NCBI RefSeq assembly: GCF_902652985.1
Contig: NC_047015.1
Span: forward strand, 53,134,001 to 53,198,000
Direction of reading: 5' to 3'
Source of the DNA: Pecten maximus
Taxonomy: Eukaryota
DNA: 64,000 nucleotides
The position numbers and the translations under genes were made by a program. Positions 11,567 to 60,136 of the stretch are shown here, one piece after another. Numbering within the stretch: position 1 is the stretch's first letter; every line of letters begins with the position of its first letter. The notes below the pieces were generated by a model. That model was not told the origin of the DNA. It saw only the letters and a list, made by a program, of their open reading frames with translations, and ran no database searches.

Positions 11567-12774
11567 CGTTTCAGACTTGCGTAACACATTTCCGTTTTAC
11601 TTGAAACGTAGTTACAGACATCTTACATACAGAGAACTAAACAATATCGAAATATGTTTATCTTAAAAAGCCAGTTACTTAAAACCAGGGGGGCCAAAAT
11701 GATACTCCAAAAAAAAAAGTACCGCGTTGTACGTGTCAATAATCTCCAGTAATTGAAGGGAACAACGTTTGGTTGGGTCTCGTGTTGGTTGGTTTCCTGT
11801 CCACAAAATGACGAGAGCATTTTGCCCATTTTCGTTTCGGGACCAGTCACAAACAGCGAGATATTCTTTATCTAATATTCATATTTTTCCTGTTTGGCAG
11901 AGAAAAGAATCCGTTGATATTTGACGAATTTATTGATATTAAGATTTCTCGTTTCATCATGACAACAATAAGACAACAGCTTCCCTTTCAATGTTTAGTC
12001 CTACCTCCCGTGTTGGCACGCTACCAGTCCTCCCTCAACTAAAGAAGGCTATATATCAGGGGCGATAACTCCTGCGAAAAGCGCAAGCTCAAACTCGGAA
12101 CGAAGTATTACTTTCGCGTCATTTGTACTGAGTTATGAAAGTTGAAGAAAAAAGTTTGCTTACGGCTTTATTTTGATCATTTAAATCATAGTTTGAAAAT
12201 ACATTTTTAAAGGTTTGCGTTGTCCTCTTCTTCCATTCCTAAAGTGCAGTTATGATGTCGTAAAGTGGGACGCGATGTCTCGATGAGAAAGGTTTCGTAT
12301 GTTCCGCGAACCTCAACCGAACAGTGGCGTTCGACCTCTGCTCCAGTCTCGTAGTAAAATTTCTCCATTGCCCTGTCATGAAAAAGTTTAGATCAGTAAA
12401 TTTTACTGTCGATTTAACGCATGAAATTAAGGGGGAAATCGGATTAAAAGATTCAATTCCGACATTTTTTTCTCTAACTATACAATATGAAAAAATTAAT
12501 TATATATAAATATATGAAGCGTTCCCCATACTATTGAATATCTTATTTTACATGAATCCGTAATAAAATTTCGATATCTACATGAATCCGTAATAAAATT
12601 TCGATATCCGAATCTTCTAACGTCATCGTATCAGAAACAGTTTAAAATATACATGTATACTGAAGTACAATAGACAAATATCTCAATTGTTTTATGGAAA
12701 ATCAGAGTCATAATAAATTATTTTGTAAATGATATTGTTATATAGACGGTGATATGGTTTGAATTGTTAGATGT

Positions 12775-13045
12775 TTGGTTTGGTCTTATTTGTTAAACGT
12801 CCTATCGACAGCTATGGTCATTTAAGGACGGCCTCCTGTGTGTGCGACATACATGCGTGTGGTGAGTGTGTATATGTGTTTTGGGAGGCTGTGATATGTT
12901 CGTATTACGTCTCCTCGTGATAGGCCGGAACTTTTGCTGATTTATAGTGCTACCTCACTGAAGCATACTGCCGAAGACACCCAGCAGGATACTCCTACCG
13001 GGTCACATTATACTGACAACGGGCCAACCAGTCGTCCCATCCTAA
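12775..13045 (-). mobile_element. SINE 3' half in intron 4 of copy A
   Basis: Closely matches 61365-61625 (aaacgtcctat…catttaaggacggcctcc…ggtcacattatactgacaacggg). Confidence 0.8.
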
Positions 13046-14910
13046 TGATATGTAAATTTTATGACGTATTTTATATGATGGTCGGTTCTTTGTCAATAGA
13101 AAAATGAAAAAGAGTTTCGGACACTTCCGGGGGCTCATTACCAGCACATCATGGAGTCGGTATCCGAAGGCTTCGGGTTTGGCCAATTCATGGTAGTTTC
13201 CATCGAATATGTCATTCCATTGGATGACCGTCAACAATGACATCTGGACATCATACTTGTTAAAACATGGAAGCATGGATTGTACAACTGAAAATGATGA
13301 TGAGATAATGATATAAATATGTAAGTACGGAATTATCTACACCTCAGCACTGACATCTTACAATCTTATTGGACCTAGAAAAAATACCTTTGCATTAATG
13401 CAGACAATGTAGTAAGCGTAGGAGAGCCAACATGGTATAGGTCAAGTTTATCGTCACATGGCTATGCCTATTTCTAGGTTTTATCTCATCGAAAACTATC
13501 AGTGTTCTGTCGGCGTGTATACAGAAATTTATTTATAATTTCGCTTGAAAAGTTATTCTCCAAATTTTTAATATAATTGTCGCTTGAACGCTTGATTCAA
13601 ACCTGTTCAAAGCGTTATCCGAGACCGGTTTCCAAGCGTCGCTTTGACTAATACAAAATTGTCTTTAATACCATCGCATACAATTGCGTGGCAAAGCCGT
13701 GATATATTTAAGGCCAGTAAATGACTTTATATCATGTCTGATATGGCGTCATAATGGTAGTAATGAAAGATAAAATTTTCTGCAGCTTTATTCAGATAAA
13801 ATCTACATATATTGGACAGCAGAATGTTTTCACTGAATTATATTGCAATATTATTTATTGTTTTAAATTCACCAATACCATGTTTGCCAGTTAGGCTATG
13901 TCATTTATAACGACTTTAAACACCATGATAGTACATTTAACATGTACGTCCCCCATCACCTGACGATGCTGACGTAATTGAATAATATCGATCTTTAATA
14001 ATCTAATGGAATAGTATAGTTGAATTGTTAAGGTGACGTCATTGCATTGTGGTCGTGACGTATTACAATTTTCATTGAAGATTTAAAGATCAAAACATCC
14101 TGGTTAAGGTGCTACATTTCGGACAAGGATTAATTGTTGTCGACTGAAAACAATACATTGTTGCTTTTATCTGATACAATGAAACACGTCGTAAACTTTC
14201 TTTATGCTATCACCACCCTTCAAAATAGTTAACTCTCTTCTTTTTTCTTTTTTTTTAGTCTTAAAGTGAATAACCAATTGATTGCACTTGAAGAAATTTC
14301 GTCGTGCCCCCTATCTATATTTAGTAACTTTCCGTCTTCTGATTAGCGACCATTTTTGGACGGTGTTTACTATTTTTGTCAATTATTCATGTTGGTTGGA
14401 TTTATTTCTTTACTTTGGGTGCCATTTTATGCATTTTTAAGATTTGATAGAGTTTTACCTGATTTCCCCGGCTGGAAACACATGTATTGGTATCTGGCGG
14501 TGAGCGATTCCACAAAATTCACAACATCAGGACAGTCTGCATATTCTCCATCGTAGTAGCACGCTAAGGACTTCTTCATGTACCTGTCAAATTTCACGAA
14601 TGTATTTAAAATGATGTATGTTAAAACATCTCAACTTGTGTATTAACACTATAATGACTTAATCATAGGCTTATTACGTCATAATAGATAAGTGACGTCG
14701 CATGATTGTCTGACTAGACGGAATCGTCCCATCCGAGCCGGAATTCGCATTCTATTACGTCTTATATTACGTAGAACAAAAATTAAGTTTTTTTGCTTAT
14801 TGTCTTATATATATATATATATATTAGTTATGTGATTAATAGAATATTATACTCGTGGCTATGTCATATGAAATTTATTAAACTCGTTCGATAATTTAAC
14901 ATGTCACTTC

Positions 14911-15150
14911 TGGCGCGGGAAGTATGTCATAATTAAATAGTTTTGCCTAGGCAAAATACGATTTCTGCCTAGGCAAAATTCGATTTCTATCTAGGCAAAA
15001 TGCGATTTCTGCCTAGGCAAAATTCGATTTTTGCCTAGGCAATAATCGAAACAAAATTATTTTTGCCTAGGCAAAAATCGAATATTGCCTAGGCAGAAAT
15101 CGCATTTTGCCTAGGCAAAAATATTTAATTATGACATCCTTCCCGCGCCA
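14911..15150. mobile_element. Fold-back MITE with an internal 21-bp palindromic (gcctaggc) array, nested in an older MITE (~14840-15240)
   Basis: TIRs tggcgcgggaagtatgtcataattaaata / tatttaattatgacatccttcccgcgcca. A half copy lies at about 38145-38212. Confidence 0.8.
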
Positions 15151-15599
15151 TAGCCACTCGCCTATAGGATGGTGGCATATACATTATTGAACTCGTTTGA
15201 TTATCTCCATATAGCATAGCCACTCATGTAAGATCCTGTATGTCCAATACATACCTGCAATGCTTCTTTAGAAACTTGGGCGTGACATCGAAGCCATTTT
15301 TAAAGGACCCTGAAGGTTCTGGGGACTCATTCTGCATCATACACATAAAATACGCCATGCACTTCATGTCGGGCATATCCCCGTTTGTAGTATTATCCCA
15401 CTCGCTGTCGAATTCGGCCGGTAATGTGGGCATTTCTTCAATCTCGTCTAGAACGTTGTCTTGGTGATCAAATATATCGCTGACGTCATTTCCGCCGGTA
15501 TATTCACGGATTGTAGAAGCTAAATATAAGTATAACTTAACATAAGTATCGTGATGAATTTAGTATATATTTCAATTCATGACTAATGCGTATGATGCT

Positions 15600-16216
15600 A
15601 TATGTCATTGCTGACTGGCTCATCAAATGACCAATCTTCCTGCAGTGTACATAAAGCAATTACATTCAGTACTCCTTTTTTCAATGGAAGATACCGTGTA
15701 TATCATCTTGAAATATACTATCACAAATGTAAGCAATGTCAAGACAATATGGGAGGTGGTCGTGCATGGATCTTTGCTCTTGTTTTTAAGTCTGGGTCAA
15801 GAAAAGAAAATCGTCATGCATTTTGGGCTGGCTCATCTTCCAAATGTTTCAAGTATTTCAAGCACTTATATCCCTTCCCCTAAATTCCTCATCGCAAGAA
15901 CACGTTTCACTTTGTCCTCGTCTGACGCGGTGTTAGAAATTTCCGCTGGATCCACGTGATCAGAGTCTCTGAAACGAAGTGGCTTCTGACGAGAACGTTG
16001 CGGGCGACCAGGCAAACCTGAAATCAGCGGCTGGGTTGACTGCCTCTCCAAACTATCTTGTGATCCATCGCGAGACTGTGGTACACACTTGAAATTTTGA
16101 TGGGGATGCGGAATCACTGGAAACAGGTCACGAATTTGCCTGGGCAGAATTCCCCCTTTCTGTCGTTTTCCGCTCGAAACAAAATTGTTCTCTTTTGAAG
16201 TTCTCCCCACGAGCAC
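15600..16216 (-). mobile_element. Degenerate Gypsy-type LTR retrotransposon pol 3' fragment (chromodomain-like)
   Basis: The translation RPQRSRQKPLRFRD…KVKRVLAMR resembles the post-integrase/chromodomain region of Gypsy elements, followed by stops. It lies in intron 1 of copy A. Confidence 0.45.
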
Positions 16217-16550
16217 CTGCAGGCGAGACGTTGATATTGTATGATCGCAGGAAGTGACTTGATTTTTGATCTTATCTTATTCCTCTCTTTCTTAAAAACT
16301 TTTTTCTTCCTATTGTCTTCCTTGACAATGCCTCACTTTTCGTCCTTACTTGAGCATTCGCCCCTGTGAGGAAGGTTTTGGGTTCTGTCCTCTGGCCGAG
16401 ACATACCAGAGTCTATACAATGGTTGTTGCTACTCCTACATGTGTACTTAGCGCTCAGCTTTTTGGGGAGCGAAACGAATGGTTCGCTCGTTGTCAATTG
16501 TACAACTGTATAACATGACCGAGTGGGGTGTCCTGCTGGATGTCGTCGCA
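16215..16550 (+). mobile_element. SINE copy (same family as 61353-61862)
   Basis: ttgagcattcgcccctgtgaggaaggttttgggttctgtcctctggccgagacataccagag. Confidence 0.75.
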
Positions 16551-18001
16551 TAGAATGGAAGATAGAGGAATACAACATACGAATAGAGTAAGAACACCGT
16601 ATGATATCTCTTACGTCATAACTATACCCCGTGATACTTTGATTAAAGTGATACACCTCCGACAAATAAATGTTTTATCAATTATAAACACAAATAGACT
16701 CATGTGTATTTTTCTTTAGTACTAAAAGTAACACACTTTACTTTATAACCACCCTCAGGAATGTTCATCTTTTTCTTTGTCTTTAGAATTAAAGAAATAA
16801 CGATAATAATAATTAATTGCGTCCCGGAGAAGTTCTATTTCGCTCCGCCTCCATATTGAATGAAATACTGACTGCGCATGCGCCGAAAAAAAACTCCCTG
16901 GTAATGGCGGACCGCATTAAGAGGGCCACAAGTAATAACATCTCCAGAAAGAAGGAAGCATTGATAAGATTGTGAAAGAGAACGAAGAAAGAGAAGGACT
17001 GCATAGACAAATTGAATACTTAGAAAAACGACAATGAAATCGAAACATATGATGAAATGACACAGTTTTTTGTTGGAAAGGCAAGTGTGCAATGTACACA
17101 CGTTTATGTATGATGTAACGTTCGGTTTGTTGTCATCTTTACTGAAAACTGTGAGCAAATGATGCGATTGAATCAATGGTTAATATTTTTTCCTGATATG
17201 TATTGATTGCAGGTTGACTTTAATCCTTCAACATGCAGCTTAAACTTATTGATAAATCACACTTGTATCGATCCAGCGAAATGGAACGTGTTGGGGTAAC
17301 GCTAAGAAAGCTTTTCAGTTCTTTTTGCATCAAAACTTCGGCATTTTAGATATGTTGTTATGACAAATTTGTTTTCTTCTGTGTGTAAATATCTCCCAGA
17401 ATGCACTGCGATCAAGGTCATATGTATGCAATGAAGATTATATTATTCAAAAGTTTGTAACGTCTTGGCTTCATAACAACAAATTCTTACATTATAAAAT
17501 TATTTTAAGTCTTAAATATGCATACATATATGTATTACGTGTCGTTAATTGTCAAAATAATACATTATTACACTCTGTCGGAGAGGTAGCATCTATAACA
17601 CTATTTTTATTCCCATTCGAAATATTTAGCTATTAAGAGCGCTCAGAACCCCCCATAATTTTGTTAATTGTTTTTAACTACATGTATTATTGAGGAAATG
17701 ACCATATTTTTAAAGCGTGGTCGTCGCATTTAAATGGGACATTAATTCGTCAATTACCGACCGAGTATTTTCTATCACCACAGCGACACAGATAAATACA
17801 GCCCTCGAAATGTCGTTCATGATATATGAACAGCACACCAGATGTTTGATATGTTGACACGAGCGACCAACATGACAAATTACATATATACTTATTCCAA
17901 AGTGGTCTCCGGAACAAATGTAAATATTAGATCAAATCGGCCGATAGAGGGTTTATTACAACAAATTAACGGAAGCCATCCTCCAGTAAAACAATGCTAT
18001 G

Positions 18002-18108
18002 AGAGGCCGCCCGGTGAGTTTATGGATACAATGCTAGTAGAGGCTGCCCGGTGAGTTTATGGATACAATGCTATTAGAGACCGCCCGGTGAGTTTATGGA
18101 TACAATGG
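18002..18108. repeat. 37-bp tandem repeat x3
   Basis: The gtgag of gcccggtgagtttatggatacaatg recurs at 18014, 18051 and 18088. Confidence 0.9.
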
Positions 18109-18994
18109 CTGATCAGAAACAGCTGGATAGACTTGATAATACATAGGATTGATTGAGGACCGATATTCCGAGATACATTTTATTGATCTATTATGAAAAT
18201 ATCGTATCTTTTTATATTACTGACACACTCAGAGTTTTGCTAATATAATCCGAAACCGTCGGCAATTTCCGTAAACGAGAAAACACGGAAAGCGCCGACT
18301 GCTCCCGATTCCTATTATAGGAGGAAACATGTTAGGTCAAAGGGCAAATTTCTTTTAGCAAAAAGAAATGTTTCTTCTTCGTCAAGTTTTAAAGGGCGTT
18401 CAATTGTTCGAACGGCTGATAGGAGTTGCAAAGTAATTAATCAACTTTATATGTATATAAAAGAAGCTTGCACTCATATTCCCGCTTATTTGTAATGAAA
18501 TAAATATCATATTCATACAGAAAATCAGTAAAGCGTATTTATGTTATCATAACTTGCAAAACTTGTAAATGAATTTAGGATATCAAAATAAGTAAGCCGA
18601 AAATTCCTCGTTCGACTCGACGGAGGCACCCCCTTCGCTCTCCTCAATCTTTCCATCTAGTTGCCGATGTATATATACGACTTAGGATGATGTTCGCTGT
18701 TTTGTAGCTTCCCCATTTCCTCGGTGATATCGTTTCCGATGACCACTTTGCTAATCGCTAACCATGGCAAGCCTTTTTTTAACTATAGCAGCTATTGGAT
18801 TTGAGTGTGATTTTTAATAACGTTTGACCGTCTTAGTGTTAAGTAAAGTTTAAAGCCGTGATTAGTCTAGAGATATACTAGATTCCCAGCTACTTTAAGC
18901 AGAAAATTATTTCAATTTCAACGACGTGATATCCCTTGAAATATCTTAACAAATATGACAAGACTATAAAACATCATATCAAAGAACAAGTCTA

Positions 18995-19265
18995 GTATTC
19001 ACAACAAAGAAACTCGTGTTCACAACACAATAATTCAAGCTCATGACACAATAACTCGTACTCACGTCAGAGAAATTCGTGCTCACAGCACAGTACATCG
19101 TGTTCACAACACAGTACATCGTGCTATCAACAAAGAAACTCGTGTTCACATCATCTGACTTATTTCAATCACATGCATGTTCTTAAATTTTTCATATCCG
19201 CGAGATACGCATGAGATAAAAATGAATATGCATGTTCTCGAAGGGGCTCCTTAAGGAGCTTCATA
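18995..19265. repeat. 21-bp minisatellite array (gtgctcacagcacaat…) in intron 1; related arrays at 44085-44250, 48605-48940 and 56190-56470
   Basis: The same unit lies in intron 1 of copies A, C, D and E. Confidence 0.7.
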
Positions 19266-20006
19266 GATGTAATAAATAAAGCGCCATATATACTAGGCTT
19301 GACATTTATAACCAATGCCCTCTAATACTACATGTTAACGTTAGCTTGTTCACAACAGTCCTCGTTGATTTTTTTTTCATTAAAAAAACTTGCAGTTTTT
19401 TTAATGACGGATTAATAAGAAATATTGTTTAAACTAAATACATGTACTCTGTGTATTATTAAAATGAAATGTAAAATATTTGAGAGAAAAAGTACCGGTG
19501 TCCTACCTGAAATGCTTCCTGTCAGGACAGCCAGTAACAGGACGACGGGAGACATGTTGTATCCTCGGGGTCGAAGTGATGAATATGGCGAAGATCAGTA
19601 ATGCACATCGTATTTATGTGGATATTTAATAAGCCCAAATTATCAAATTATTAGTCATTTGACTCATTTTTGTCCGAATTGTCTTTAAAGTTGAACCTTG
19701 ATATTAGACCACCAAATTACGCGATACAGGAGAACTCATTCGAGAAGATTTTAATCTGTTATGACATGTAGATGTCTATCGTTTGTGTAGGGTAGTTTGA
19801 CATTTTATTTTTCGATAATGTAAAAGTAAATCATATGTATTTTATATAAAAGAATTGATTATTTTTCATTTTATTGCTTTTTCTAATTTTCCTAAACTTT
19901 GTAAACTGCAATACCAAAGAGAATTTCTGAAAAATTTCATCAAAAGCAACCTTTTTATTGACTAAGTGGAGAGGACAAAAGGGTACATTTCTCCTTTTGT
20001 CTTTGT

Positions 20007-23184: not shown

Positions 23185-25941
23185 CATTCTGACGCAAACA
23201 CGTGAAATAAGCCAAGCATTGCATGTTGGGCATTTCCCCGATTGTATAATTCACCATCTCGCTGTCGATGTCGGCCGATAATGAGGGCATTTCTTACTCT
23301 CAACGAGATCGCTATCTTGGCGATCCAATATATCGCTGACGTCATTTCCGCCGGTATGGTCACGGATTGTAGAAGCTCATAATGTTCGTGATGAATATAA
23401 AACATATATTTCGATACTAAAATGTCAGTTTTATTCAGACCAATGGTTCAAAACTGGCCCGTCCTTGATGAGTACGAGATTCCTTCTTCTACCGTTTTTT
23501 CACTCGAAAAAATACCGTTCTCTTCAGAGGTGAGGCCCTGCAGGTAGGGCGTTAAAATCGTACTCAATGCATGATCGCATTAGATGATTAAATTTGGGAT
23601 CTTACTTTCTTTCTTTTTTCTAAACAACTTCTTCCTAATCTCCCTTGAGACTGACTTACTCTTGGCGTTTAGTTGAGCGTTCACCGCAGTGAGGGAGGTT
23701 TTGAGTCCTGTCCCAACATATTTAGGAGTGCGACATCGCCCGTTGACAGTACAATTGTATATCCTGCTGGATGTTTTCGGCGGTGTGTTTCAGTAAGACA
23801 GCACTATAAATCGACATCAGATTTGCACTATCTCAAGGAGACAAACAGGGTCATACTGCAGCCTTCCAAAACAAACACACACACACTTCACTCATGCATT
23901 TCGCACACATGGGAGACCGTCCCCGAATGACCATAGGTAAGTTGTTGTAGTATCAGAACAATGTTCTAACGTCAACATCGGCGAGATACGAATCGGTATA
24001 ACATCTGAAAATATCTAGATATTTACGGATTCTGAAATTATGGACCGTCTTGTGCTGTCATTCGAGAGCTGTGACCTTGACAAGGAAACACGCAATATGC
24101 ATCCCGTGTGGTTTATTAGCTAGCCACAAGCAACTACAATTGGATTCTAATTTAAGAATACCCTTGCTGTCGACATGGTGATGAAACCAACAAATAAGCT
24201 TGGATAGAGCATAAGAACACGATACGATATCTCTGTTACGTCATAATTATCCTTTTTCGAAAAAGGACATTATTTTGAATGCGTAGTCGTCGCTTTTAAA
24301 AGGGACAATCATTCGTCAATTACCGAACGAATATCTGTTTAAAATCACAGTGATACAGATAAGTGCAGCCCTCGAAATGTCGTTGAGGACTTATTAACAA
24401 CACACCAGCTGTTTTGTTTTTATTATTTTCACATGGGAAAACCCACGTGACCAATTACGTGCATATTTATTGCAAAGTAATCTCCGAAACAAGTGTAGAT
24501 AAGGGACAAACTGGGCTGATGAAGGTTTTATTACAACAAATTAACGGAAGCCAGCCTCCAGAAAAAAAAAAAACAATGGTACGATGAGCTCATGGATTCA
24601 GAGGCTGATTCAGAAAAGGTTGGAGAGACATGAGCGAACAAAGGATTTATTGAGGACTGATATTTTAAGTATATCTTATTGGTCAATGTTCTGCTAGGAT
24701 CACAGAGAGAATTCAGGAAAATGTCACATTTTATATAACACTGACACAGTCAGAGTTTTGCTAATATAATCGGAAACCGTCGGCAATTTCCGTAAACAAA
24801 ATACGGATAGCTCCAATTGGTCCCCTATCTACACTTGTTTCGGAGAATAAGAATATGATGCTTAATTTCATCACAATTAGGCAGAAATACGAGTGTAACC
24901 TTCTTTTTATATATGAAATTGATCAATCACTTTTGAACTCCCAAAGGACATTCAATCGTTCGAACGGTGAACACGAGATCATATTTCGTGAACGGGAGTT
25001 AGTTATTACCAGCGACCGAGCTAATATCTCGTGCGGACGAATTAGTTATGTCGGGGCCACGACTTTATATCTCGTAATTAATTTATGCACATGTCATATT
25101 AAATCTAAACAGACGTCTCATCTCATGCCGTGTGTTAGTGAACAAATGAACAACACATTAATTATTTCATACCAGCGAGATATAGTCAAACCAGAATGAC
25201 ATGTCGCGACGACCTTTTCCTGGAATATTCAAAATGGGTAGTTGCATTTGTGCACATGTGTGTTAACAAAACATATTGATTAGGAATACTACTGTGTCCA
25301 GCAGGGTGCTGTTTTGGACCATTCGTATTTGTTACAATTTTATATTGACAACACAGGGGATTGTATGATTATTTTTGATGCATGGTTAACACATATTCGA
25401 GTAACTATGTGATCAATTATTCACATGTTAACAGTTTTGTCGCTAAATCTAGACCAGTATAAATACAAATGATGAAGCTGATGATAAGGTTTGTTACATT
25501 ATAAACAACTAACAGATATACATACAAAGCACCTATTTCCCCTTAATGACTATAGACTCGTCTGTAATCAAAATACTAATCAAAGTTCATCACGACAGGT
25601 CATTCTGGTCGAACTATACGCACGTGATAAAAAAATAATACACAATGTGTATTCTCGGAGGGGCTCCCTCAGGGTCTTCGTAGATGAGAAGGAAAAAAAG
25701 TAAGCGCCAAATATACTGAACATGACATATATTACTATATTTTATAACGCCCTCAACTACATGTATATCTTTAGCTTATATTTTCCAATCCTCGCTGCAT
25801 TTTTATTGTAAAACTGTGGTGTTTAAATAACGGTTAAATAAAAATAATTCATTAAACTGAAATGTAAAATGTTTGAGAGAAAAAGTTCCTACCTGAAATG
25901 CTTCCTGCTATGACAGCCAGTAACAGGACGACGGGGGACAT
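23185..25941 (-). pseudogene. Truncated paralogue B of the secreted Cys-rich protein gene
   Basis: The signal exon 25941-25893 (MSPVVLLLAVIAGSIS) is intact. The exon 2 remnant 23375-23185 has a degraded acceptor, a 1-nt deletion near 23295 and truncation after CLAYFTCLRQN. Exons 3-5 were not found. Confidence 0.85.
23535..23937 (+). mobile_element. Diverged SINE copy
   Basis: Same family as 16215 and 61353; its position in intron 1 corresponds to the 16215 copy in gene A. Confidence 0.65.
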
Positions 25942-41775: not shown

Positions 41776-41807
<32 letters not shown>

Positions 41808-48372: not shown

Positions 48373-51300
48373 ATGTCTCCCCTGGTCCTGTTACTGGTTC
48401 TCATAGCAGGAAGCATTTCAGGTAGGATAGTCCTTTCTAATATACTTAGATTTTGTTTTGACATCATTTGAAGTTATGAGTTCTAAGGGATTGTTTTTAG
48501 ATATTTTTTTCTTAATTGGGGAGAATTACGGGATTTCTTTGGTGCGGAACGCTTTCGTTTTATTCCATGCATTCACATATTTATTGATGTGGATACAAGG
48601 CATCGTATTGTGAGCGTGCTATGTTAGGGCATGCGCATGAGCTTTTATGTTGTGAGCATGAGATGTCTTTTTGTGAGCAGGAGTTCTTATGATGTGAGCA
48701 CGAGATTTTATGTTGTGAGCACGACATTGTATGGTATGAGCACGAGCTATGGTGTTGTGAGCACGAATCGTTATGCTGTTATCATAAGTTAATGATGATA
48801 ACGAGTTACTATGTTGTGAGCAAGATTTATGAACATCGTACTGTTAGCACGAGTAATTGTGCTGTGAGCACGAATTATTGTGTTCCAAGCACTAATCATT
48901 GTGTTTAAGCACAAGTCATTGCGCTGTGAGCACGAGTTATTATTTACTCCTTTTATATATGTATCAACATCTTAACTCTACATTATGTCCATATAACGCT
49001 GCGATGATAAATTGACTGCTGTCTGCGTTTTCTTTGTTTTCGTGAAAAGACAAAACCAAGGAAAATATTCTTTCTTTTGGCATGTGTAGTCCCTCGTTCA
49101 TCCAATACGTAATAACGAAACTGTTGTCAATGCTCATTGTCATAGGACACGACGAAATGTCACATGTTATTACGAGTTTCTGGAGCAGTTATTCAGCTCT
49201 GTATGGACTGTGTTTTAATTAAACCGTAACGTTATACCCCATTATTAGTCTGAATTTATGAACATGATTTATAAATAAACGAAACCATACGGGAACAAAT
49301 AATAAACATTTACCTTAAAACATCATGACTATTGTTAGAAAAAACGTCAGTATTATCAACGCTCTGATCGAAAAGAGTATGATGACGTCACGAAACAATC
49401 GGACAGTGTGATGACAGGTCGTGTTCAGATTAATTAAACCGTATTTGCAATCGTCAATGTTCTTATCTGCGTGAATAGAACATTTGTGTATTTAAACAAA
49501 ACTTAAATGGTCTTAATTCGGCCTTTAATTTATACGTGTCCTTTGATTAGGCCTGAGGATAGTGTTAATGACAACCATGAAGCGTCGGTAATTTCCGTAT
49601 TTTCATCTTTACGGAAACATCCGACGGTTCCCGATCTGTTGCATGAGGTTCCCAAGCAGGTCGACTCTTCTTCTTCTTTTTCTTCTTCAGAAATGTCCAG
49701 CTCGGGGCTCACCTTGCAGCGCTGAAGTCGAGCTTCTTTTGGGCGTGACCGTTAGTTAGTTAGTTAGTTCATCATTCGCATGGGTGTTTTATTGAATTTG
49801 GTTATTTGGTTACATTTATATTTTTGTGTCTTGAGTAATGGAAATGTATTAATATTTAAACTTGATGTGTTTGTTCTCCGTGATCCTGCAATTTTCATGG
49901 TTAACTTTAAGACTGCTCTGAAAAATAAACCAAAATGTCCGATAGGCAACAATCTTGGGTATTCGTTGAAGATTGTTATCACTAATTAAGTCTCCATCAA
50001 AGTTCCATTCAGTATAAGAAAGATCAGTCTTACATAGATACCATCAAGGTCATTCGATGGCAGGCGTAAATATCTATCTGGGGTTTATATGTCACCTCTT
50101 CCATAGAGAAACTGAGCGCAGGGGTTAAACTTATGCAGTACATCTCGGTTGTTGAGCCCGGCATGGCATTTCGGGGCTACAATTATGTTAGTGACTTCAT
50201 AGATTGTAAAGGTCTGTCAGCTATTAAACTATCCAGTGTGACATCGATAAAGAGTATTGAGGACTACCACCTATGAAACATATTTTTCCTGAATAATAGT
50301 TAGAAATTTAAAGGTTTTCTGGACACACAATTGCCATGAAGGATTGCTATTTCCGCAAATGGAATGAGAAAAATGTAATACTTATATCCCTATTATTTAA
50401 TTAGATATGACGGCAGAAATATAATTATACATTTAGAAAGTGAAGTATTTATAAGCCCACTGACATTCGACAGGCGCATTATGGTCAAGTGTCTGCGTCC
50501 GTTCTTCCGTCCGGGGGCCGCGATAACTCGAGTAGAACGCAAGTTTAACGTTGAAAATTGACCCGGGTAACTTTTCAACGTTGAATATTGACCCTGAATG
50601 CCGTTGAAAATTGAACCATCGGCGCATTCTTTACTTCGACCCATGGAATATGGACTCCGTTTAAAACTGACCCAATTACAGATGGTTTATCATTTCGTAA
50701 CTATACCCGCCCTGTCGAATCGATTATTATGGCCAAATCGATCACACCAAATGTCAAGGTCAAGCGACGAGTCATTCATTTATCGATTTCATTTATGTGG
50801 AGCAGGGTGCAAGATGTTTTCACTAACCAACAAGCGATTTTTTTAATGTCGTGTAGCTCGACATACGACATGCAACATTCAGAAATTGAATGATATACAG
50901 TTCAACTTACGACAGTCAACAAAAAATGTAATCACTGGCTATCGAGGCTTTGCAGGTCAACATACGGCATTCAAAATTCAGACATTGTAGAGCGCGATAT
51001 GCGACATTCAGATTTTGAATGTTGTGCAGCTCGACATTCGACATTCAATTATGGCAAGCTAGGTTGTGACAATGTTGATCCGTTATTTTACCAAATTATA
51101 TATATTTTGTGATATATCTTGTAAATCTTTTTAAGAAAATTATGATATATCTCATTTATTATAAGATATCTTATATAATTTATTTATAAATCCTGGATCG
51201 ACGTTGCTCCGTGAATAGATGACATATTCGCTTGCCATACTCAAATGTAATCACTGGTCAAAGAGGAAACTTTTGAATGTCGTGCAGCTCGACATAATAT

Positions 51301-54300
51301 ATGCATTGCCGTTTTCTGATATCAAAAATATTTCCTGAAATCAGATACATGTAATAGTTGCTTTATACCTAAACATATGTTTTTGATTTTTGATTTTTCA
51401 ACAACATACCCCAGTTCAACGGCATTCAGGGTCAATATTCAGGGTTGAAAACTGACCAGGGTCATTTTTCATCGAGGGTCCATTTTCACCGGCCACATAA
51501 CGGGACGGTTTGTGTTGTCCTTGTTTCGTCCTTGGGTAAGAAACCTTTACAGTTACACTGGATGACATACGATTGGCCTCTCGAATGTTTAGTGAAGTAG
51601 TCACCAACTACTATAAAATGTCTATGGCAGTTCACGGGGTGATAAAACCAGCAAACTTATTTTGGCATAGAAGTTCATGTGGGGTCTTGCAAAGACAATA
51701 CAGATTAGATTTACGAAAATAATTTTGATGTTTAAATTTTTTTTGTCATGTTTGAAACTTAACTTAACCAGCAATTTCTCGGTTAAAGATTTGATGCAAG
51801 TTTCAAATCATGTATCAGTTTGTGCTGCTCATCTTCATATAACTTGTCCGACTACGAGACTAATATTGATCATTAGTAAAAAATGAATATCTTTATTACC
51901 AGCTTCTAAAATCCGAGATTATACCGGCGGAAATAGCATCGAGGATGTATTTGAACACCAAGACAGCGCTGGTCCCGGAAGTGAAGAGATTACCAACATA
52001 CCGGCTGACAACATCGACAGCGAGGTGATTACCGATACGGACATCGATACAGAGCAAGCCAACATGCAGTGCAATGCATTTTACACATGTGCGATGCAGA
52101 ATCCGCCCCCTGCACCTTTGGGGTCCATCACGAAAGGCTTCTACATTTCCCCTGGATTCTTAAAGAAAATATGCAGGTATAGTGAACATTGCTGTAATAG
52201 CATTTCTGGTTCTCGTTATGCCAATATATGTAACACTCTAGGGAATGGACACTATATGCCCTTACCAACTGTAGGTGGGCGTTACCGACTCATAACTGCT
52301 AACTTGCGTATAAATATAACAGTAAAGAAATAGCAACAGTTTTCTTCCTAATATATCCATTGACACTGTCTCATATTTGGCGGTCTTTTGTTGAAAGTTT
52401 GACACTTTGTGAAAGGGTTTAACAGTTGTTGTTCCTTTCTTTTACTGTCTGCTCCCTCTTGCTTTGTTTTGTTTTCTTCTGTGGGTGTAGTTGATAGAAA
52501 ATAATTCTATCTCTGTGTCTCGTAAAATGTTATCAGATAGTTTTCATTCTTGCGTGTTATTTGACAGGTATATGAAGACATCAGTAGCCTGCTATTATCA
52601 AGGAGAGTATGCCGACTGTCCAATTGTGACGGGGAATGTTAAAACTATGACCAACATGTATCGATACATGTGTGTTGAGCCAGGCAGATCAGGTACCTTT
52701 AACTAAAATGGCTAACGTGTTATAAATGAATGATAATAAATTGACGTAAATTAACTCCATTTATAATCTTATTGTACAAACGGCATGATTGCAAGATATT
52801 GAGATTGTCTTGTCTCAAATTTGTTGCTATTTCAATGTTATATACGGTTTTATAAAGTTTACGTGTAGGTAAGAGAAGGGATATCAACCGAAAACACTCA
52901 ATTTCGGAATTTTATCCTCATCTTCCTCAGTGTGTTGTGGTTTCTCATACTAAGATATTCAAGATGGCGGAGACCTGTACGGAAAGCGAAACAGCTACAA
53001 GGACTGGTCAAATGGTTCATGCTTCTTTGTATATTGAGATGGAGATGTATATCGCTTATAACCATATTAAACATCAATGCAATTCTTACATGAACGCAAA
53101 TGATGACATGTGGTGATTTGGACGCCATCTTCGTATACGTCAAAGCGACGCTTGAAAGTCCACCTCAGATAATACCATGTACGGCTTTGAGTAAAAGCGC
53201 TCAAGCGACTGACACATTTTCAATTGGACATGTAATATGTAGATGTTTTATTACGAGACACAAAAACAAAACAAAATATACTGAGATTAAATTAAAGTAA
53301 GCCTTTACCGGAGATAGGTTTTCATGTCATCTTATCCGGAACAATTATGTAGTTAAGGGGTTTAGAATGTACTACTTACCTTGAATGATACCTATATTAT
53401 TATTATCATTATTAACACTTTTCCAGCTGTGCTGTCTATGCTTCCATGTATCAACAACTACGAGGTCCAGTTTCAACTGATTTTGTCATCTTACGGGTGG
53501 TCACATTCGGTTAAAACAATCATGGATTGGCCAGACCAAGAACCTTCTAATATCGCTTTGATGATGTGCAGGTAAGATTCTTCAGGTCAAAGGTCGTGTG
53601 ATATACTTCTAAAATATATTCACACTTACACTTTGGTTCAAAGCAAATTTTCTATTCTGATATCTCACACTGCTGTGTACGATGTACTTCCGTAGGGGAG
53701 ACATTTCCTGTGTTCGCTGGCAATTGCAATATAGTTAAAATTCGAACGTTTCCCGCTTGACTGATTCTAAATACGTAATTGTTTTGTAACGATATGCCAC
53801 CCATCCATTTCTGATTTTACAAATGTAAAAAAAAAATATAATGTAGGTTATGAAAAAAAGAAGGTTGACATATTATTTAATCACAAAATTTAGTTACGAA
53901 AGTAAAAGGAAATCGAAATCTGATGTCTGTTTTTCTTTATTTCCTACAGTTAAGGACAGTCTACAAAATGATATTATGTTTGTTGATCTGAACTTTTGTT
54001 TTTCTTTATTTCGTACATTCAAGGACAGTCTACAAAATATGTTTGTTGATCTGAACTTTTGTTTTTCTTTATTTCGTACATTCAATGACAGTCTACAAAA
54101 TATGTTTGTTGATCTGAACTTTTGTTTTGTTTTTCTTTACTTCGTACATTTAAGGACAGTTAATAAAATGTGTTTGTTGATCTGAACTACTGTTTTGTTT
54201 TTCTTTACTTCGTACATTCAATGACAGTCTACAAAATATGTTTGTTGTTCTGAACTTTTGTTTTTCTTTACTTCGTACATTTAAGGACAGTTAATAACAT

Positions 54301-54554
54301 ATTTTTGTTTATCTGAAATTTTGTTTTTTCGTTACTTCGTACATTTAAGAACAGACCACAAAATATATTTATAGCATCGCACTGTTTATTTCAGGGCAAC
54401 GAGGAACTTCTACTACGATACTGGTTCGGAGATTGAACACCAATGTTCGGCAGTCGATCGTCGCGTTTACGAACATATGATAGTGGTTTGGTCGCGGTTT
54501 GATCTACGAAGATTTAACTGTACCCTTGAAGAAAACAACAACACAAGTCTCTAA
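48373..54554 (+). CDS. Secreted Cys-rich protein paralogue D, 250 aa
   Basis: Exons 48373-48421, 51903-52176, 52568-52692, 53427-53571 and 54395-54554; GT-AG, open frame, 10 Cys, ends NCTLEENNNTSL*. Confidence 0.9.
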
Positions 54555-55148: not shown

Positions 55149-55150
<2 letters not shown>

Positions 55151-55353: not shown

Positions 55354-55834
55354 TGCAAAAACTACGAATTCATTTCGTAATGTCATTTATTGACCAATAG
55401 AAATATATGTGAGGAAAATGGATTAAGTCACTTTAAATGGATACTTCCATTTCATTGAAAAGACTATACGTCATAATTAACATATTTTATGATTATTTTT
55501 ATTTACATATTACATATAAACATAAAAAATAACGTATTTTGACGAGGATTATATAACATTTAAATGTCAAAATAAAAAGATGTGTTAGCTGTCAAATTTT
55601 AGTTGTTTATTTCAACAATTATTGCCCCAAAATTATACAAAAAACTACATAATTTACCTAAACTTTAGAGAGTAAAAGCATGTCCGATTATTTCAAATAT
55701 CAAAGTCCCACTTAAGAATAAAATTGGGAAAATATTTTAATAATTGCATCATTATGTTCCGTTATATGTGCATATGAATACATATTACATTGTTCGTCTT
55801 CCCCATATGCATCACTTCTCCCCGAGGATACAGC

Positions 55835-58800
55835 ATGTCTCCCCTTGTCCTGTTACTGGCTGTCATAGCAGGAAGCATTTCAGGTAAGATACCGATAGTC
55901 CTTCTTTTAAATATACTTCTGAATGTATTTCGTTTCGACATATCATTTGAAGTCATAAGTTCTAAGGGACAGAGTTTTTAATTCTTTAATTTCAGAGATT
56001 TGATATAAACTTCATTTCATTCCAATATGTATATTACAAATGTTTACAACAATAAAGTAAAAATATACAGGAATAGGATCCAGAAACAAGTTTTTAAAAA
56101 ATATATATATTAATCCGTTTCCAAACGGAGATTTACGGGACTGGTTTAGCGTAAAACACTTGTTTTATTTCGTGTATCCATGTTTTATCTTGAGTACGTG
56201 TAGTTATGTTGTGAATATGAGATATAGCGTCGTTAGAACGAATAACACAGATGTATTATGTTGTTAGCACGAGCTAAATGTATTAAGTTGTGGGCACGTG
56301 TTACATAAACGTGGTATGTTGTGAGCACGAGATGTTATGTTGTAAGTACGATTTTGATGTTGTGATTACGATTTATATCGATGTGGGCACTAATCATTGT
56401 GCTATGAGCATTAATCATTGCACTGTAAGCACTAATCATTGATCTGTGAGCACATGTCATTGCGTTGTAAGTTATTCTTTACTCCTTTTACATATACATG
56501 TACCCAAATCATCACTCTGCATTAATTCCGAAAAAAGGATGCGACGATAAATTGACTGTTATCTGTGTTTTCTTTGTTTTCGTGAAAAGACAAAAACCCA
56601 AGAAAAATATTAGATTAAACATAGCGGCTGACATAATGTAATACATGTGGAAGTTATTGTCTTTATGATCCCGTCGAAATTCGTATTATGGTCGGATGCT
56701 CCTAAACAATGTCGGTTTTTTGTTTCTCGGGGAAACTGAGAAACGGGTTGGTCTGTGCTGCTGTTAGTGTGTCCTTGGGCAAGACACATTACCCTTATCG
56801 CTCTGGATGCCATGCGACGGCCGTCCTGTATTTTGTCCAGTGAGGTAGTCACACTTCTACAAAATCACTCTGACAGAGCACGGGGCAATACATCCAACAA
56901 ACAAACAAACTGGTTCGTTTCTTCAGTGGTCTACAGTTCAGTCAGATAATGTGTTAGTGTCCTCATCTTTAGCATTGATGCTCTTATAGGATCGAACAAA
57001 GACAGTTTGGATTTTATTTGGAAAAATATGTTTGGAACTTAACTTTTTTGCATAAAGTTTCAAACCATGCATCCATTTGTGGTGCTCTTCTTCACATATC
57101 TTGTCCGACTACGAGACTAATATTAATCAATATTCAAAAATAAATATCTTTATTGCCAGCTTCAACAATACGAGATTATATCGACGGAAATAACATCGAG
57201 GATGTATTTGATCACCAAGAAAACGCTGGCCCCGGAAGTGAAGAAATAACCAATTTACCGGCTGACAACATCGACAGCGAGATGGTTACCGATACGGACA
57301 TCGGTACAGATCAAGCCAACATGCAGTGCAATGAATTTTACATATGCATGTTCGCAAATCCGCCCCCTCAACCTTTGGGGTCATTCACGGAAGGCTTCAC
57401 CTTTTCCTCTGGATACTTAAGGGAAACGTGCAGGTATGATGGGCACTGTAGTATTCGCATTTCCGGTACTCGTTATGCCAAAAATGCTCCATGAATTCGT
57501 TATCAAAATGTCAGTGTTTCACAGAGATAAATTGCTGTAGTTTTAATTACACCAACTGTCCCCATTAGAGGATTCGTAAGAGGCAACTAAATTTGGAAAC
57601 CTATCTCTTCCTAATAGACAACTGTTTTCCTCCTAACAACATCTCTCTTTACACTGCCTTATTTTTGTCACTGTATGGAAGGATATGGTGGCCCCCGCCC
57701 TGACAATAGTTCTCTTGTTTCCCCTTTCTGTTTGCCCGTTTCTTCCGCTTGTTTTCTTTTTAGATATGTCTTTCACACCCGTCCTCATACGACCCTGGCT
57801 GTTGCGAAGATATGATCTATAATGTATTTATATCAATCTTACCGATTAGTCAAGTTCACTCAAGTAAAAGTATCACTAGTGAAAATAATATACTTTTATG
57901 AATCATTTCTCTCTCTCTCTCGTGAATTGTTAAAAGTTTAAAATATTTTTCATTCTTGTGTGTAATTTGACAGGCATCTGGAGTCGTCAATAGCCTGTTA
58001 TTATCAGGGAGATTATGCCGCCTGTCCCACGCTGATGGAGAGTGTTAGAACTATGACCAACATGTATGATTACATTTGTGATGCGCCAGGCAGATCAGGT
58101 ACCTTTAAATCAAAATGGCTAACGTTTCATAAGTAGATGATAATAAATGACATGAATTAAATAAATAATCAAATTGTTCAAATGGTATGGTGATATCGAG
58201 ATCGTCTTGTCTCAAATGTGTTGTTACGTTTTGGTAAGCAATCGTAAACACACAATATCGGAATTGTATCCTAATTGTCTTCACAGTGTGTTGTGTTGTC
58301 TCGCTCTAAGATATTCAAGATGGCGGAGCCCTGTACAGATAGTAAAACCGCTTCCAGGACTGGTTACGTGGTTCATACTGCTGTTTATTTAGATGAACAT
58401 TTACATTTTACTAATAACCATATCTGACAACAATTCAATGCTTACATGAACGCAAATGACGACACTTGGTGATTTTATATAAGTCAAAGCGACGCTTGGA
58501 AGTCCACCTCAGATAACACCGTGTACGGCCCTGAATAAAGCACTCAAGCGACTACAAATTTTATCACTTGGTCATATAATCTATAGATGATTTATAACAA
58601 GACACAAAAACCAAGAATATGCTTAGATTAGATTAAATTAAACCTTTACCGGAGATAAATTTTATGTCATATTATCCGGAAAATTAGCTGGGTCCATGAA
58701 ATTGTTGTAATGTTACAGTAAAGAGGTTTAGAAAGTACTCTTACCTTGAATGATACTTATATTATTATTATTAACACTTTTTCAGCTGTACTGTCCATTT

Positions 58801-60136
58801 TTCAATGTATCAATAACTTCGAGCTCCAGCTGCCATTGATGATGATGTCTTTCGGGTTGTCACATTCGATCAGGACAATTATGGATTGGCCCGACCAGGA
58901 GCCTACAAATATCGCGCTGATGATGTGCAGGTAAGATTATTCAGGTCAAAGGTCATGGGAAATGTTCCTAAAATATATTCATAGTTACACATTTGTTACC
59001 AGCTTACGTTTACCTCCCTTCTTAAAGATAGCGCAGAGAGTCGAGCTTTCTTCCAATCGTCTTGTAGTGTTCCTGTTGAAAGTGATTTGTTAGACATATT
59101 GGTAAATGGACCTAATATTGATGCAGCAGTGTTTTTGAGAAACATTGGATGGAGTTCGTCCAATTCAGGCGACTTTTCTGGTTTAAGATCTAGACTAGTA
59201 AGTATTTCAAACACCATCTCGACGTTGACTTTAAGCATTGGCATTTCCTCGGTTATCACCTGTTGTTTTTGTTGAGGTGTTTTTGCCCTGTCTCTTCTTT
59301 CACAAACACGCTACTGAAAAACTTTGAGAGTACATCAGCTTTTCATATATCCTACGAGACATTAGGTGAGTTTTTATCTTTTGGATTTGAATAAAGGTCT
59401 CCGATGTCTGACTTTGATGTTGAGTTAGATTCAAATCGGCTTTAGGGTCTGTTTTGGCCTGTCTGCAATGCTGTGCTCATACTTTTTCCTTGGTTTACAA
59501 GTTTGGTTTATTTTTTCTTACTTTGTTTCTGGCCTTTCTGGTCCTTATTATCGAGTTCTTTCTTCCATGTATTTGCTTCTTGAAGCTTTTCTAAACAATA
59601 AGTTCCTTTTTAATGGCTTCCCACGTGACTTGGTTTGCTGGAAAGCTGTGTCTGTTGTTCCTACCAACTGTGATCATTTTTGTCGGTACATATTTATCTT
59701 CTATTTCCTTTAATATTATTTTTCTTTATTTCGTACATTTAAGGACAGCCCGCAAAATATATTTGTTGATCTGAACTTCTGTTTTTCTTTATATCGTACA
59801 TTTAAGGACAACCCAAAAAAGATATTTGTTGATCTGAACTTTTGTTTTCTTTATATCGTACATTTAAGGACAACCCACAAAATATATTTGTTGATCTGAA
59901 CTTTTGTTTTTCTTTATTTCGTACATATAAGGACAGCCCATAAATGTATTTGTCTCATCTGAACTTTTTATGACAGGGTGGCACAGAGCTTCTACCAAGA
60001 GTCCGGAGCGGAGATTGAACGCCAATGTTCGGAAGTCGATCGTGGAACTTTCGAACATATCTTCGTGATATGGTCGCAGTCTCCGCTACAAAGGTTTAAC
60101 TGCACGATTGGAGAAAACAACAACACAAGTCTCTAA
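55835..60136 (+). CDS. Secreted Cys-rich protein paralogue E, 250 aa
   Basis: Exons 55835-55883, 57160-57433, 57974-58098, 58786-58930 and 59977-60136; GT-AG, open frame, 10 Cys. Confidence 0.9.
56690..56912 (+). mobile_element. CORE-type SINE fragment
   Basis: gtgtgtccttgggcaagacac and an (aaac)n tail. Confidence 0.55.
58997..59712 (-). mobile_element. Degenerate CR1 LINE ORF2 fragment in intron 4 of copy E
   Basis: LKPEKSPELDELHPMFLK…SLSTGTLQDDWKKA is the pre-RT region of CR1 ORF2; it is absent from C and D. Confidence 0.8.

What the first reader, a model, noticed from the sequence alone, without database searches (positions are those of the whole stretch)
12207..60136. Hidden five-copy cluster of an unrecognised secreted 10-cysteine protein family
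Seen: five paralogues with the same exon plan (49/274/125/145/160 nt in C, D and E; phases 1,2,1,2). Three are intact (C, D, E; 250 aa), A is frameshifted and B is truncated. Copy D translates as MSPLVLLLVLIAGSISASKIRDYTGGNSIEDVFEHQDSAGPGSEEITNIPADNIDSEVITDTDIDTEQANMQCNAFYTCAMQNPPPAPLGSITKGFYISPGFLKKICRYMKTSVACYYQGEYADCPIVTGNVKTMTNMYRYMCVEPGRSAVLSMLPCINNYEVQFQLILSSYGWSHSVKTIMDWPDQEPSNIALMMCRATRNFYYDTGSEIEHQCSAVDRRVYEHMIVVWSRFDLRRFNCTLEENNNTSL. It has a signal peptide, a ~55-aa Asp/Glu-rich segment, 10 invariant Cys, a conserved N-C-T sequon and no TM or GPI tail. I do not recognise it as a named gene. Inference: a birth-and-death family of secreted effectors (immune/haemolymph, shell/byssus or signalling).
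Basis: partly seen in the sequence, partly recalled or inferred. Interest (0 to 1): 0.78.

Follow-up and report, generated by a model that had tools for sequence, protein, structure and literature searches.

The report
Scallop-only secreted ten-cysteine gene cluster
A real, transcribed cluster of five copies of a small secreted cysteine-rich protein gene, found only in scallops and already listed in the public annotation as "uncharacterized", whose function remains unknown.

Summary
The window (Pecten maximus, by the names on the matching database proteins) carries five paralogues of one five-exon gene. C, D and E are intact at 250 aa (coding 49/274/125/145/160 nt, phases 1,2,1,2, all GT-AG). 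A has a one-base surplus in exon 4. B is an exon-1 plus broken exon-2 relic. The N gap lies inside intron 2 of copy C and touches no exon. RNA contigs from four runs of four studies carry all five junctions that lay inside the laid stretch, at the predicted bases.

The cluster is not hidden. RefSeq lists four "uncharacterized" loci with identical 250-aa products, and B's first exon serves as an alternative first exon of A.

No other copy exists in the 918-Mb genome. An exhaustive profile search of 1.84 billion proteins found relatives only in four scallop genera.

The predicted protein has a signal peptide, a roughly 55-aa acidic disordered segment, and a roughly 175-aa all-helical domain with 10 invariant Cys. 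No Pfam family reaches its cut-off and no solved structure matches. Repeated sub-threshold hits to nematode CPG4/DUF19 suggest, but do not prove, remote kinship.

Function is unknown; a soluble extracellular binding or defence protein is my best guess. Earlier notes of this scan are from this same window only. Interest is modest.

The parts
48373..54554 (+). Copy D, intact gene (LOC117337912; 250 aa). Coding exons 48373-48421, 51903-52176, 52568-52692, 53427-53571, 54395-54554 (stop included).
   Evidence: Searches give the exon bounds with GT-AG; product is identical to P0001. RNA contigs carry the joints 52176|52568 (X1, X12, X6) and 53571|54395 (4 of 4 runs); 52692|53427 appears in X12 record 9.
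55835..60136 (+). Copy E, intact gene (LOC117337902; 250 aa). Coding exons 55835-55883, 57160-57433, 57974-58098, 58786-58930, 59977-60136.
   Evidence: One search gives the exons; searches give P0003; joints 55883|57160 (X1, X5, X12) and 57433|57974 (X1, X5). The 793-nt X5 contig has spacing that fits exons 4 and 5 at 145 and 160 nt.
39204..45140 (-). Copy C, intact gene (LOC117337878; 250 aa). Coding exons 45140-45092, 42355-42082, 41426-41302, 40557-40413, 39363-39204. It lies head-to-head with D.
   Evidence: Searches give the exons; searches give P0002. It was not covered by the read laying.
41457..41705 (.). Assembly gap (N) inside intron 2 of copy C, 30 nt upstream of the exon-3 acceptor.
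   Evidence: One search gives the position; both flanks are colinear with intron 2 of D and E. No letters were inferred.
12207..19555 (-). Copy A, frameshifted (LOC117337885). Exons 19555-19507, 15519-15255 (265 nt), 14583-14459, 13287-13142 (146 nt, one base more than in C, D and E), 12372-12207 (166 nt).
   Evidence: RefSeq models P0008 and P0004 read through into the shifted frame and end at 214 aa.
23186..25941 (-). Copy B, a relic. It has an intact exon 1 (25941-25893) with a conserved 5' flank, and an exon-2 remnant (23375 to about 23186) that is frameshifted, after which homology ends. Its exon 1 is used as the alternative first exon of A in RefSeq isoform X2.
   Evidence: no exons 3-5 found; the P0004 N-terminus equals the B exon-1 peptide; the upstream region is conserved.

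Best explanation
This is a scallop-restricted (Pectinidae) family of small secreted glycoproteins, amplified by tandem and inverted duplication in Pecten maximus.

Shown:
- Three intact copies exist (C, D, E). D and E were shown spliced in RNA contigs; C was not covered by the read laying.
- There is one older copy with a +1 frameshift (A) and one relic (B). B's promoter and first exon now serve A.
- Exon 1 encodes the signal peptide.
- The rest of the protein is a roughly 55-aa acidic segment predicted to be disordered, followed by a roughly 175-aa domain predicted to be all-helical (seven to eight helices plus a short hairpin).
- The domain has 10 invariant cysteines.

Inferred:
- The 10 cysteines form five disulfides that staple the helices, so the product is a stable soluble extracellular protein.
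- Its domain is a very distant relative of, or at least built like, the nematode secreted CPG4/DUF19 cysteine-rich domains.
- It acts by binding an extracellular partner (a ligand, a surface or a microbe) in body fluid, mucus or gut lumen. The paralogues diversify quickly (dN/dS 0.5-0.7, about 1 in exons 2-3), as is common for defence or environment-facing proteins.

The binding role is a guess (about 0.35). The gene structure and family limits are solid (above 0.9).
For: Gene models and copies. Identical RefSeq products. Splicing: GT..AG joints at 5 of the 5 predicted junctions inside the laid stretch, in contigs of four runs from four studies, one of them a declared RNA-Seq library. Family limits: own-genome exon-profile searches hit only this window at E below 0.1. 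The profile search of 1,835,955,588 proteins gave 5 hits at E<=0.001; by source names these are Pecten maximus, Argopecten irradians, Ylistrum balloti and Mizuhopecten yessoensis. Two further word-seeded profile searches found pectinids only. Fold: the AF2 model of D has pLDDT 75-93 over residues 70-244 and below 40 over residues 1-69. The model of the Argopecten domain has pLDDT 80.4 and pTM 0.75, with the same helix order. Remote kinship: Pfam CPG4 matched 5 of 8 family proteins at E 0.0027-0.017, always to the same stretch (profile positions 26/27-79 of 94). DUF19 matched 1 of 8 at its C-terminal end, which is colinear. ESM-Atlas feature neighbours (0.87-0.90, 187-204 shared features) include DUF19, CPG4 and DUF1397 clusters. 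Selection: dN/dS is 0.54, 0.72 and 0.58 for C-D, C-E and D-E, and exon 4 is the most constrained. The 10 Cys are conserved across genera.
Against: Every CPG4/DUF19 hit is below the curated cut-off (16-19 bits against 32.7; 14.5 against 23.2). E (P0003) and the Ylistrum protein (P0006) gave no such hit. The Atlas tool's own calibration says scores of 0.9 arise in 4-10% of shuffled proteins, and that only 3 of the ten best family-bearing hits share a family or clan, so the top-ranked named family (DUF1397) is probably wrong. No profile-profile or structure comparison with real CPG4/DUF19 members could be run. No solved structure matches (Foldseek best E 0.3-0.8; VIA best Z 7.5 among generic helical rows). 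The signal peptide and disulfides are predicted, not measured. No tissue, induction or protein-level data were available. dN/dS rests on 29-41 synonymous differences per pair. Four of five AF2 models of the second run were poor (54-59).
Confidence: 0.55

Rival explanations
1. This is an orphan family with its own fold and no ancestry shared with CPG4/DUF19/DUF1397. The weak matches reflect only the general look of secreted, cysteine-rich helical proteins.
For: All Pfam matches are below cut-off and are missing in 2 of 8 proteins. The exhaustive HMMER search found nothing outside scallops. The Atlas calibration warns of chance neighbours. No PDB fold match was found.
Against: The same Pfam family hits the same stretch in five proteins that are only 44-52% identical across genera. 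An independent method (language-model features) names the same two families.
Confidence: 0.35
2. It is an acidic shell-matrix or biomineralisation protein. The Asp/Glu-rich N-terminal segment binds calcium or carbonate surfaces, and the cysteine domain anchors it in the organic matrix.
For: The mature N-terminal segment is acidic and predicted disordered (13-14 D/E of 55, pI about 4.05). The family is restricted to one shelled lineage.
Against: The acidity is modest (about 25% D/E, with no poly-Asp runs) and is weaker in Ylistrum (7 D/E of 39). No paper in the searched library names any of the accessions (supplements were closed). There are no repeats or low-complexity blocks of the kind I recall as usual in matrix proteins (recalled, no call).
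Confidence: 0.12
4. The loci are decaying pseudogenes or annotation artefacts that make no functional protein.
For: Two of the five copies are broken. dN/dS is high in exons 2-3.
Against: Three copies keep full open frames and canonical splice sites. Spliced RNA contigs were found in four runs from four studies. All 10 Cys are kept in genera that are only 34-57% identical. Overall dN/dS is below 1, and exon 4 is strongly constrained.
Confidence: 0.03

Closest known systems
Pfam PF15481 CPG4 (chondroitin proteoglycan 4 domain; nematode secreted proteins)
   Same: Both are secreted and cysteine-rich. Residues 99/102/103-157/159/160 of five family proteins (30-87 in the 175-aa fragment P0005) match profile positions 26/27-79 of 94 at E 0.0027-0.017. 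CPG4 clusters are among the Atlas feature neighbours (0.87).
   Different: Scores of 16-19 bits lie far below the 32.7-bit cut-off. There is no match in E or in Ylistrum. The scallop domain (about 175 aa) is much longer than the 94-position profile. No glycosaminoglycan-attachment evidence was sought or seen.
Pfam PF01579 DUF19 (large family of secreted C. elegans proteins)
   Same: The size class is similar: 140-220 aa in C. elegans, where 42 of 51 genes have a signal peptide and 14 are induced on infection (PMC3534327, Table 2 passage only). Both are multi-copy families. The C-terminal 53 residues of the Mizuhopecten fragment match the last 50 profile positions (E 0.032). A DUF19 cluster is an Atlas neighbour (0.89, 204 shared features). 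A 'DUF19 domain-containing protein' K1PB63 is listed for oyster digestive tissue (PMC10058639, table passage only), so the label occurs in bivalves.
   Different: Only 1 of 8 proteins matched, at 14.5 bits against a 23.2-bit cut-off. The cysteine register was not checked. An own-genome scan with the Pfam model found nothing, but that scan works exon by exon and its positive control did not ring either.
Pfam PF07165 DUF1397 (arthropod cluster named 'northern house mosquito hypothetical protein' in the Atlas)
   Same: It is an Atlas feature neighbour (0.89, 195 shared features) with a similar length of 228 aa.
   Different: No HMM match was found in 0 of 8 proteins at E<=10.
RGM N-terminal domain (chain 6z3m_C)
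   Same: It is a disulfide-linked three-helix bundle that aligns over 72 of 74 residues to the last three long helices (Z 6.7).
   Different: The match is tied with unrelated helical rows. Identity is 12% and there is no sequence-level signal. It covers only half of the scallop domain.

Membership tests
Pfam CPG4 (PF15481) | Whole-protein score at or above the curated gathering cut-off (32.7 bits) | tested here: not met
   16.1-18.7 bits in 5 of 8 proteins (P0001, P0002, P0004, P0005, P0009). No match in P0003, P0006 or P0007. No match in any of 8 single-exon peptides.
Pfam CPG4 (PF15481) | Match at the same place in diverged orthologues (consistency expected of true remote homology) | tested here: met
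   Profile positions 26/27-79 of 94 align to the homologous stretch in all five matching proteins, which come from two genera.
Pfam DUF19 (PF01579) | Whole-protein score at or above the curated cut-off (23.2 bits) | tested here: not met
   14.5 bits, E 0.032, in 1 of 8 proteins (P0007).
Pfam DUF19 / CPG4 | Cysteines in register with the family's conserved cysteines; profile-profile or structural match to real members | not testable with these tools
   No member sequences or models of these families could be obtained. hmmscan shows no alignments and no AlphaFold DB library is on hand.
Pfam DUF1397 (PF07165) | Any HMM match | tested here: not met
   0 of 8 proteins at E<=10. It appears only as an Atlas neighbour at 0.89.
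RGM_N / neuritin-like three-helix module | Structural match standing clear of unrelated folds, plus a sequence signal | tested here: inconclusive
No PDB sequence hit was found.
Pectinid 10-Cys family (defined here) | Signal-peptide exon, acidic segment and 10 Cys at fixed spacing; five coding exons with phases 1,2,1,2 | tested here: met
   C, D and E meet all features. A meets them up to its frameshift. Argopecten and Ylistrum proteins keep the 10 Cys.

The most novel reading that the evidence does not exclude
The scallop family is the first recognisable molluscan branch of a protostome-wide superfamily of secreted, disulfide-stapled helical domains. That superfamily would join nematode DUF19/CPG4 and perhaps insect DUF1397, all of unknown fold and function. 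The three expressed, fast-diverging paralogues would then offer a tractable non-nematode system for finding what these domains bind.
Probability: 0.4. Interest if true: 0.45.

Novelty: new member of a known kind. Interest (0 to 1): 0.28.

Why it matters
Lineage-restricted secreted cysteine-rich families are common in molluscs and are usually left as "uncharacterized". This one is cleanly delimited: one locus, five copies, four scallop genera. D and E are shown spliced in RNA contigs, and the family has a confident predicted helical domain with no solved counterpart. If the weak link to nematode DUF19/CPG4 holds, it extends a large family of unknown function beyond ecdysozoans and gives a second system in which to test it. 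In practical terms, the report corrects the claim that the genes are unannotated. It shows that the assembly gap does not affect any coding exon. It also documents a relic copy whose first exon is reused by its neighbour.

Tried and rejected
- Exon-by-exon Pfam scan of 8 exon peptides of D and E: 0 families at E<=10. The pieces were too short to be informative.
- Own-genome scans with Pfam DUF19 and CPG4 models: no match, and the tool's controls did not ring either, so this says nothing.
- PDB sequence searches with two profiles: best E 0.25-0.5, unrelated molecules.
- Foldseek against PDB with two models: best E 0.81 and 0.30, TM 0.12-0.34, nothing credible.
- VIA-align wide with two models: best Z 7.5 in both, generic helical rows.
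- Internal duplication: hhalign of the two halves gave probability 0.6%. Rejected as unsupported.
- The 'FNCT' motif at 40039: a chance match, not an alternative exon 5 of C.
- Paper searches. Six locus tags gave 0 papers and six accessions gave 0 papers. A prefix search for DUF19/CPG4/DUF1397 was swamped by unrelated words. A whole-word search gave 22 papers, of which I read passages in three. Supplements were closed, so proteome or expression tables naming these loci could exist unseen.
- Tissue of expression: run records are coded, so nothing could be said.
- Contig depths were not used to rank expression, as the tool warns.
- The contigs that 'go back' from E exon 2 to D exon 2 are colinear within exon 2. 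I read them as paralogue or allele mosaics of de Bruijn contigs, not as trans-splicing.

Full report
WHAT IS THERE

The window has about 36% G+C and one N run at 41457-41705. A six-frame motif scan, open-segment listing and boundary checks recover copy D as five coding exons. These are 48373-48421, 51903-52176, 52568-52692, 53427-53571 and 54395-54554. Their lengths are 49/274/125/145/160 nt, every intron is GT..AG, and the phases are 1,2,1,2.

blastn of the D exons against the window and tblastn of exon peptides find exactly four further copies.
- E lies on the + strand at 55835-60136.
- C lies on the - strand at 45140-39204.
- A lies on the - strand at 19555-12207.
- B lies on the - strand, with exon 1 at 25941-25893 and an exon-2 remnant from 23375 to about 23186.

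C and E have the same exon lengths as D and open frames throughout. An 'FNCT' at 40039 is chance.

A has intact exons 1, 2 (265 nt), 3 and 5 (166 nt). Its exon 4 has 146 nt instead of 145, which shifts the frame. B changes frame inside exon 2, loses homology after about 190 nt, and has no exons 3-5.

THE GAP

The N run lies in intron 2 of C, 30 nt upstream of the exon-3 acceptor. The sequence on its 5' side aligns with the start of intron 2 of E (217 nt, 83%) and of D (52 nt). The sequence on its 3' side aligns with the end of intron 2 plus exon 3 of D and E, in the same order and strand. No reading frame crosses the gap. True continuity is not shown. I inferred no letters.

NOT HIDDEN

I did not submit a joined model. 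I searched exon by exon first: Pfam on eight exon peptides gave nothing. I then searched the protein database with the unchanged open frame around D exon 2, scored on the exon part only. Three proteins came back, all 250 aa and all named 'uncharacterized protein [Pecten maximus]'.
- P0001 is LOC117337912 (XP_033754950), 100% identical; this is D.
- P0002 is LOC117337878 (XP_033754912); this is C.
- P0003 is LOC117337902 (XP_033754939); this is E.

A is annotated as LOC117337885 with two 214-aa isoforms that run into the shifted frame. Isoform X1 starts with A's own exon-1 peptide. Isoform X2 starts with B's. The relic B therefore supplies an alternative first exon. The 5' flank is conserved in all five copies for at least 200 nt upstream of the ATG.

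TRANSCRIPTION AND SPLICING

Seventeen listed runs from six studies hold part of 51800-60300, and four of them are declared RNA-Seq. I laid contigs of four runs from four studies on 52101-58100. All five predicted junctions inside that stretch are present at the predicted bases with GT..AG.
- D 2/3: 52176|52568, in X1, X12 and X6.
- D 3/4: seen in the pieces of X12 record 9.
- D 4/5: 53571|54395, in 4 of 4 runs.
- E 1/2: 55883|57160, in X1, X5 and X12.
- E 2/3: 57433|57974, in X1 and X5.

One 793-nt X5 contig carries the E exon-1 tail, exon 2 and exon 3. Its remaining letters fit exons 4 and 5 at exactly the expected offsets. Another contig ends at the E exon-1 donor and starts at 55538, so the 5'UTR is at least 297 nt.

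Not tested by reads: D 1/2, E 3/4 and 4/5 directly, and all of C, A and B. Contigs cannot give expression levels or strand. The records were coded, so no tissue is known.

FAMILY LIMITS

Profiles of exons 2, 3, 5 and 4 (A1-A4) were searched against the whole 918,306,378-base assembly. They hit only this window at E below 0.1 (the best outside hit was E 0.23).

A profile of P0001-P0003 was run with HMMER against 1,835,955,588 representative proteins. It gave 5 hits at E<=0.001.
- The query cluster itself.
- P. maximus LOC117337885.
- A cluster holding Argopecten irradians XP_069123038 (247 aa).
- Ylistrum balloti XP_060071723 (228 aa).
- A 102-aa Mizuhopecten yessoensis fragment, OWF42802.

Two further word-seeded profile searches added nothing. 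By sequence the family is confined to scallops.

A small tree was built from six proteins, trimmed at A's frameshift. It puts C, D and E on one side of a split with 85% support, and A with the Argopecten and Ylistrum proteins on the other. This fits A being the older copy and C, D and E being a Pecten-lineage expansion. With six tips and no root, this is only suggestive.

THE PROTEIN

The first 16-17 residues are a hydrophobic leader (KD19 mean 1.9), encoded by exon 1 with a phase-1 boundary. Nothing beyond residue 20 exceeds 1.38, and the C-terminus is polar, so there is no TM helix or GPI-like tail. SignalP was not available.

Residues 18-72 hold 13-14 D/E against 1-2 K/R in the Pecten copies (7 against 5 in Ylistrum). 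They are modelled with pLDDT below 40.

Cysteines sit at 73, 79, 107, 116, 125, 143, 157, 197, 215 and 240. They are invariant in C, D and E and conserved in the other genera.

Sequons: N-C-T at 239 (N-C-S in Argopecten; absent in the Mizuhopecten fragment), plus overlapping N-N-T and N-T-S at the C-terminus of the Pecten copies.

AlphaFold2 on a 9-row alignment gives pLDDT 75-93 for residues 70-244: a short hairpin and seven to eight helices (pTM 0.63). A second run on the natural 175-aa Argopecten domain fragment gives pLDDT 80.4 and pTM 0.75 with the same order of elements, although four of its five models were poor.

COMPARISON WITH KNOWN FAMILIES

No Pfam family reaches its cut-off. CPG4 (PF15481) matches 5 of 8 family proteins at E 0.0027-0.017 (16-19 bits, cut-off 32.7), always over the same stretch and the same profile positions. 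DUF19 (PF01579) matches the C-terminal end of the Mizuhopecten fragment at E 0.032. E and the Ylistrum protein match neither.

The ESM-Atlas feature search, a different method, lists unnamed arthropod and nematode clusters, DUF1397, DUF19 and CPG4 at 0.87-0.90 with 187-204 shared features. By the tool's own calibration this is a lead, not proof.

PDB sequence searches find nothing. Foldseek finds nothing credible. VIA-align's best Z is 7.5 among generic helical rows. The RGMB N-terminal domain appears at Z 6.7 over 72 of its 74 residues but is tied with unrelated rows. hhalign of the two halves of the domain gives 0.6%, so I see no support for an internal duplication.

I therefore do not file the family under CPG4, DUF19, DUF1397 or RGM_N. 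I regard distant kinship with CPG4/DUF19 as somewhat more likely than not.

For context, DUF19 in C. elegans is a family of 51 genes, 42 with a signal peptide and 14 induced on infection, sized 140-220 aa (PMC3534327, Table 2 passage). Individual DUF19 genes appear in expression tables of PMC3527274 (passages). A 'DUF19 domain-containing protein' is listed among oyster digestive-tissue proteins in PMC10058639 (table passage).

EVOLUTION

Nei-Gojobori counts summed over exons give dN/dS of 0.54 (C-D), 0.72 (C-E) and 0.58 (D-E). Exon 4 is the most constrained (pN/pS about 0.26-0.32). Exons 2-3 are near or above 1 in some pairs, but the counts are small.

C differs from D much more in exon 5 (pS 0.35) than in exons 1-4 (0.07-0.21). 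This hints at gene conversion between the head-to-head pair or at a mosaic history.

A LINE with endonuclease and reverse-transcriptase ORFs sits between B and C. Minisatellites in introns 1 and 4 are shared among copies.

MECHANISM

Shown:
- Spliced transcripts of D and E.
- Conserved open frames.
- A conserved cysteine framework.
- Restriction to scallops.

Inferred:
- Secretion.
- Five disulfides.
- A stable helical extracellular domain with a flexible acidic tail.

Guessed (about 0.35): a soluble binding or defence-related role. This rests on rapid paralogue divergence, tandem expansion and the possible DUF19/CPG4 link. A shell-matrix role (about 0.12) is kept as a rival.

NOVELTY AND VERDICT

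The genes are already in RefSeq as uncharacterized loci. No paper in the searched library names them (supplements closed). The family as such is undescribed, but it is of a common kind. Interest is modest (0.28). It would rise if the link to DUF19/CPG4 were confirmed.

Earlier notes of this scan came from this same window only.

Noticed in passing
window 25893-25941 and 12207-19555: The intact first exon of relic copy B is used as the first coding exon of RefSeq isoform X2 of the neighbouring frameshifted gene A (LOC117337885). Isoform X1 uses A's own exon 1.
   Followed up: partly
window 31885-34990 (-): A non-LTR retrotransposon lies between copies B and C. It has an 812-aa ORF with a reverse transcriptase domain (E 8.6e-35) and an overlapping 253-aa ORF with an endonuclease/exonuclease/phosphatase domain (E 2e-09).
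   Followed up: partly
window 39386-39711, 53928-54370, 59719-59968: A 63-bp minisatellite (4-7 copies) sits just upstream of exon 5 in intron 4 of C, D and E alike. A 21-bp repeat sits in intron 1 of A, C and D (42-bp period in E). The repeats were duplicated together with the genes.
   Followed up: no
window 39204-39363 versus 54395-54554: Exon 5 of C is much more diverged from D (pS 0.35) than exons 1-4 are (pS 0.07-0.21). This suggests gene conversion between the head-to-head pair C/D, or a mosaic origin.
   Followed up: no
window 52102-52173 and 57274-57346: RNA contigs in three runs switch from an E-like to a D-like sequence within exon 2 ('goes back' joints with 12-13 letters between). 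The pieces are colinear in exon coordinates, so these are probably paralogue or allele mosaics of the contig assembly, or transcripts of copy C.
   Followed up: partly
window 63016-63754 and 1751-2269: There is a 47-bp satellite of 15.5 copies at 94% match near the right end of the window, and a 16-bp repeat of 32 copies that creates long spurious ORFs at 1532-2335.
   Followed up: no
A 140-aa ORF at 27880-28302 (-) gave no Pfam match at E<=0.01. I did not examine it further.
   Followed up: no
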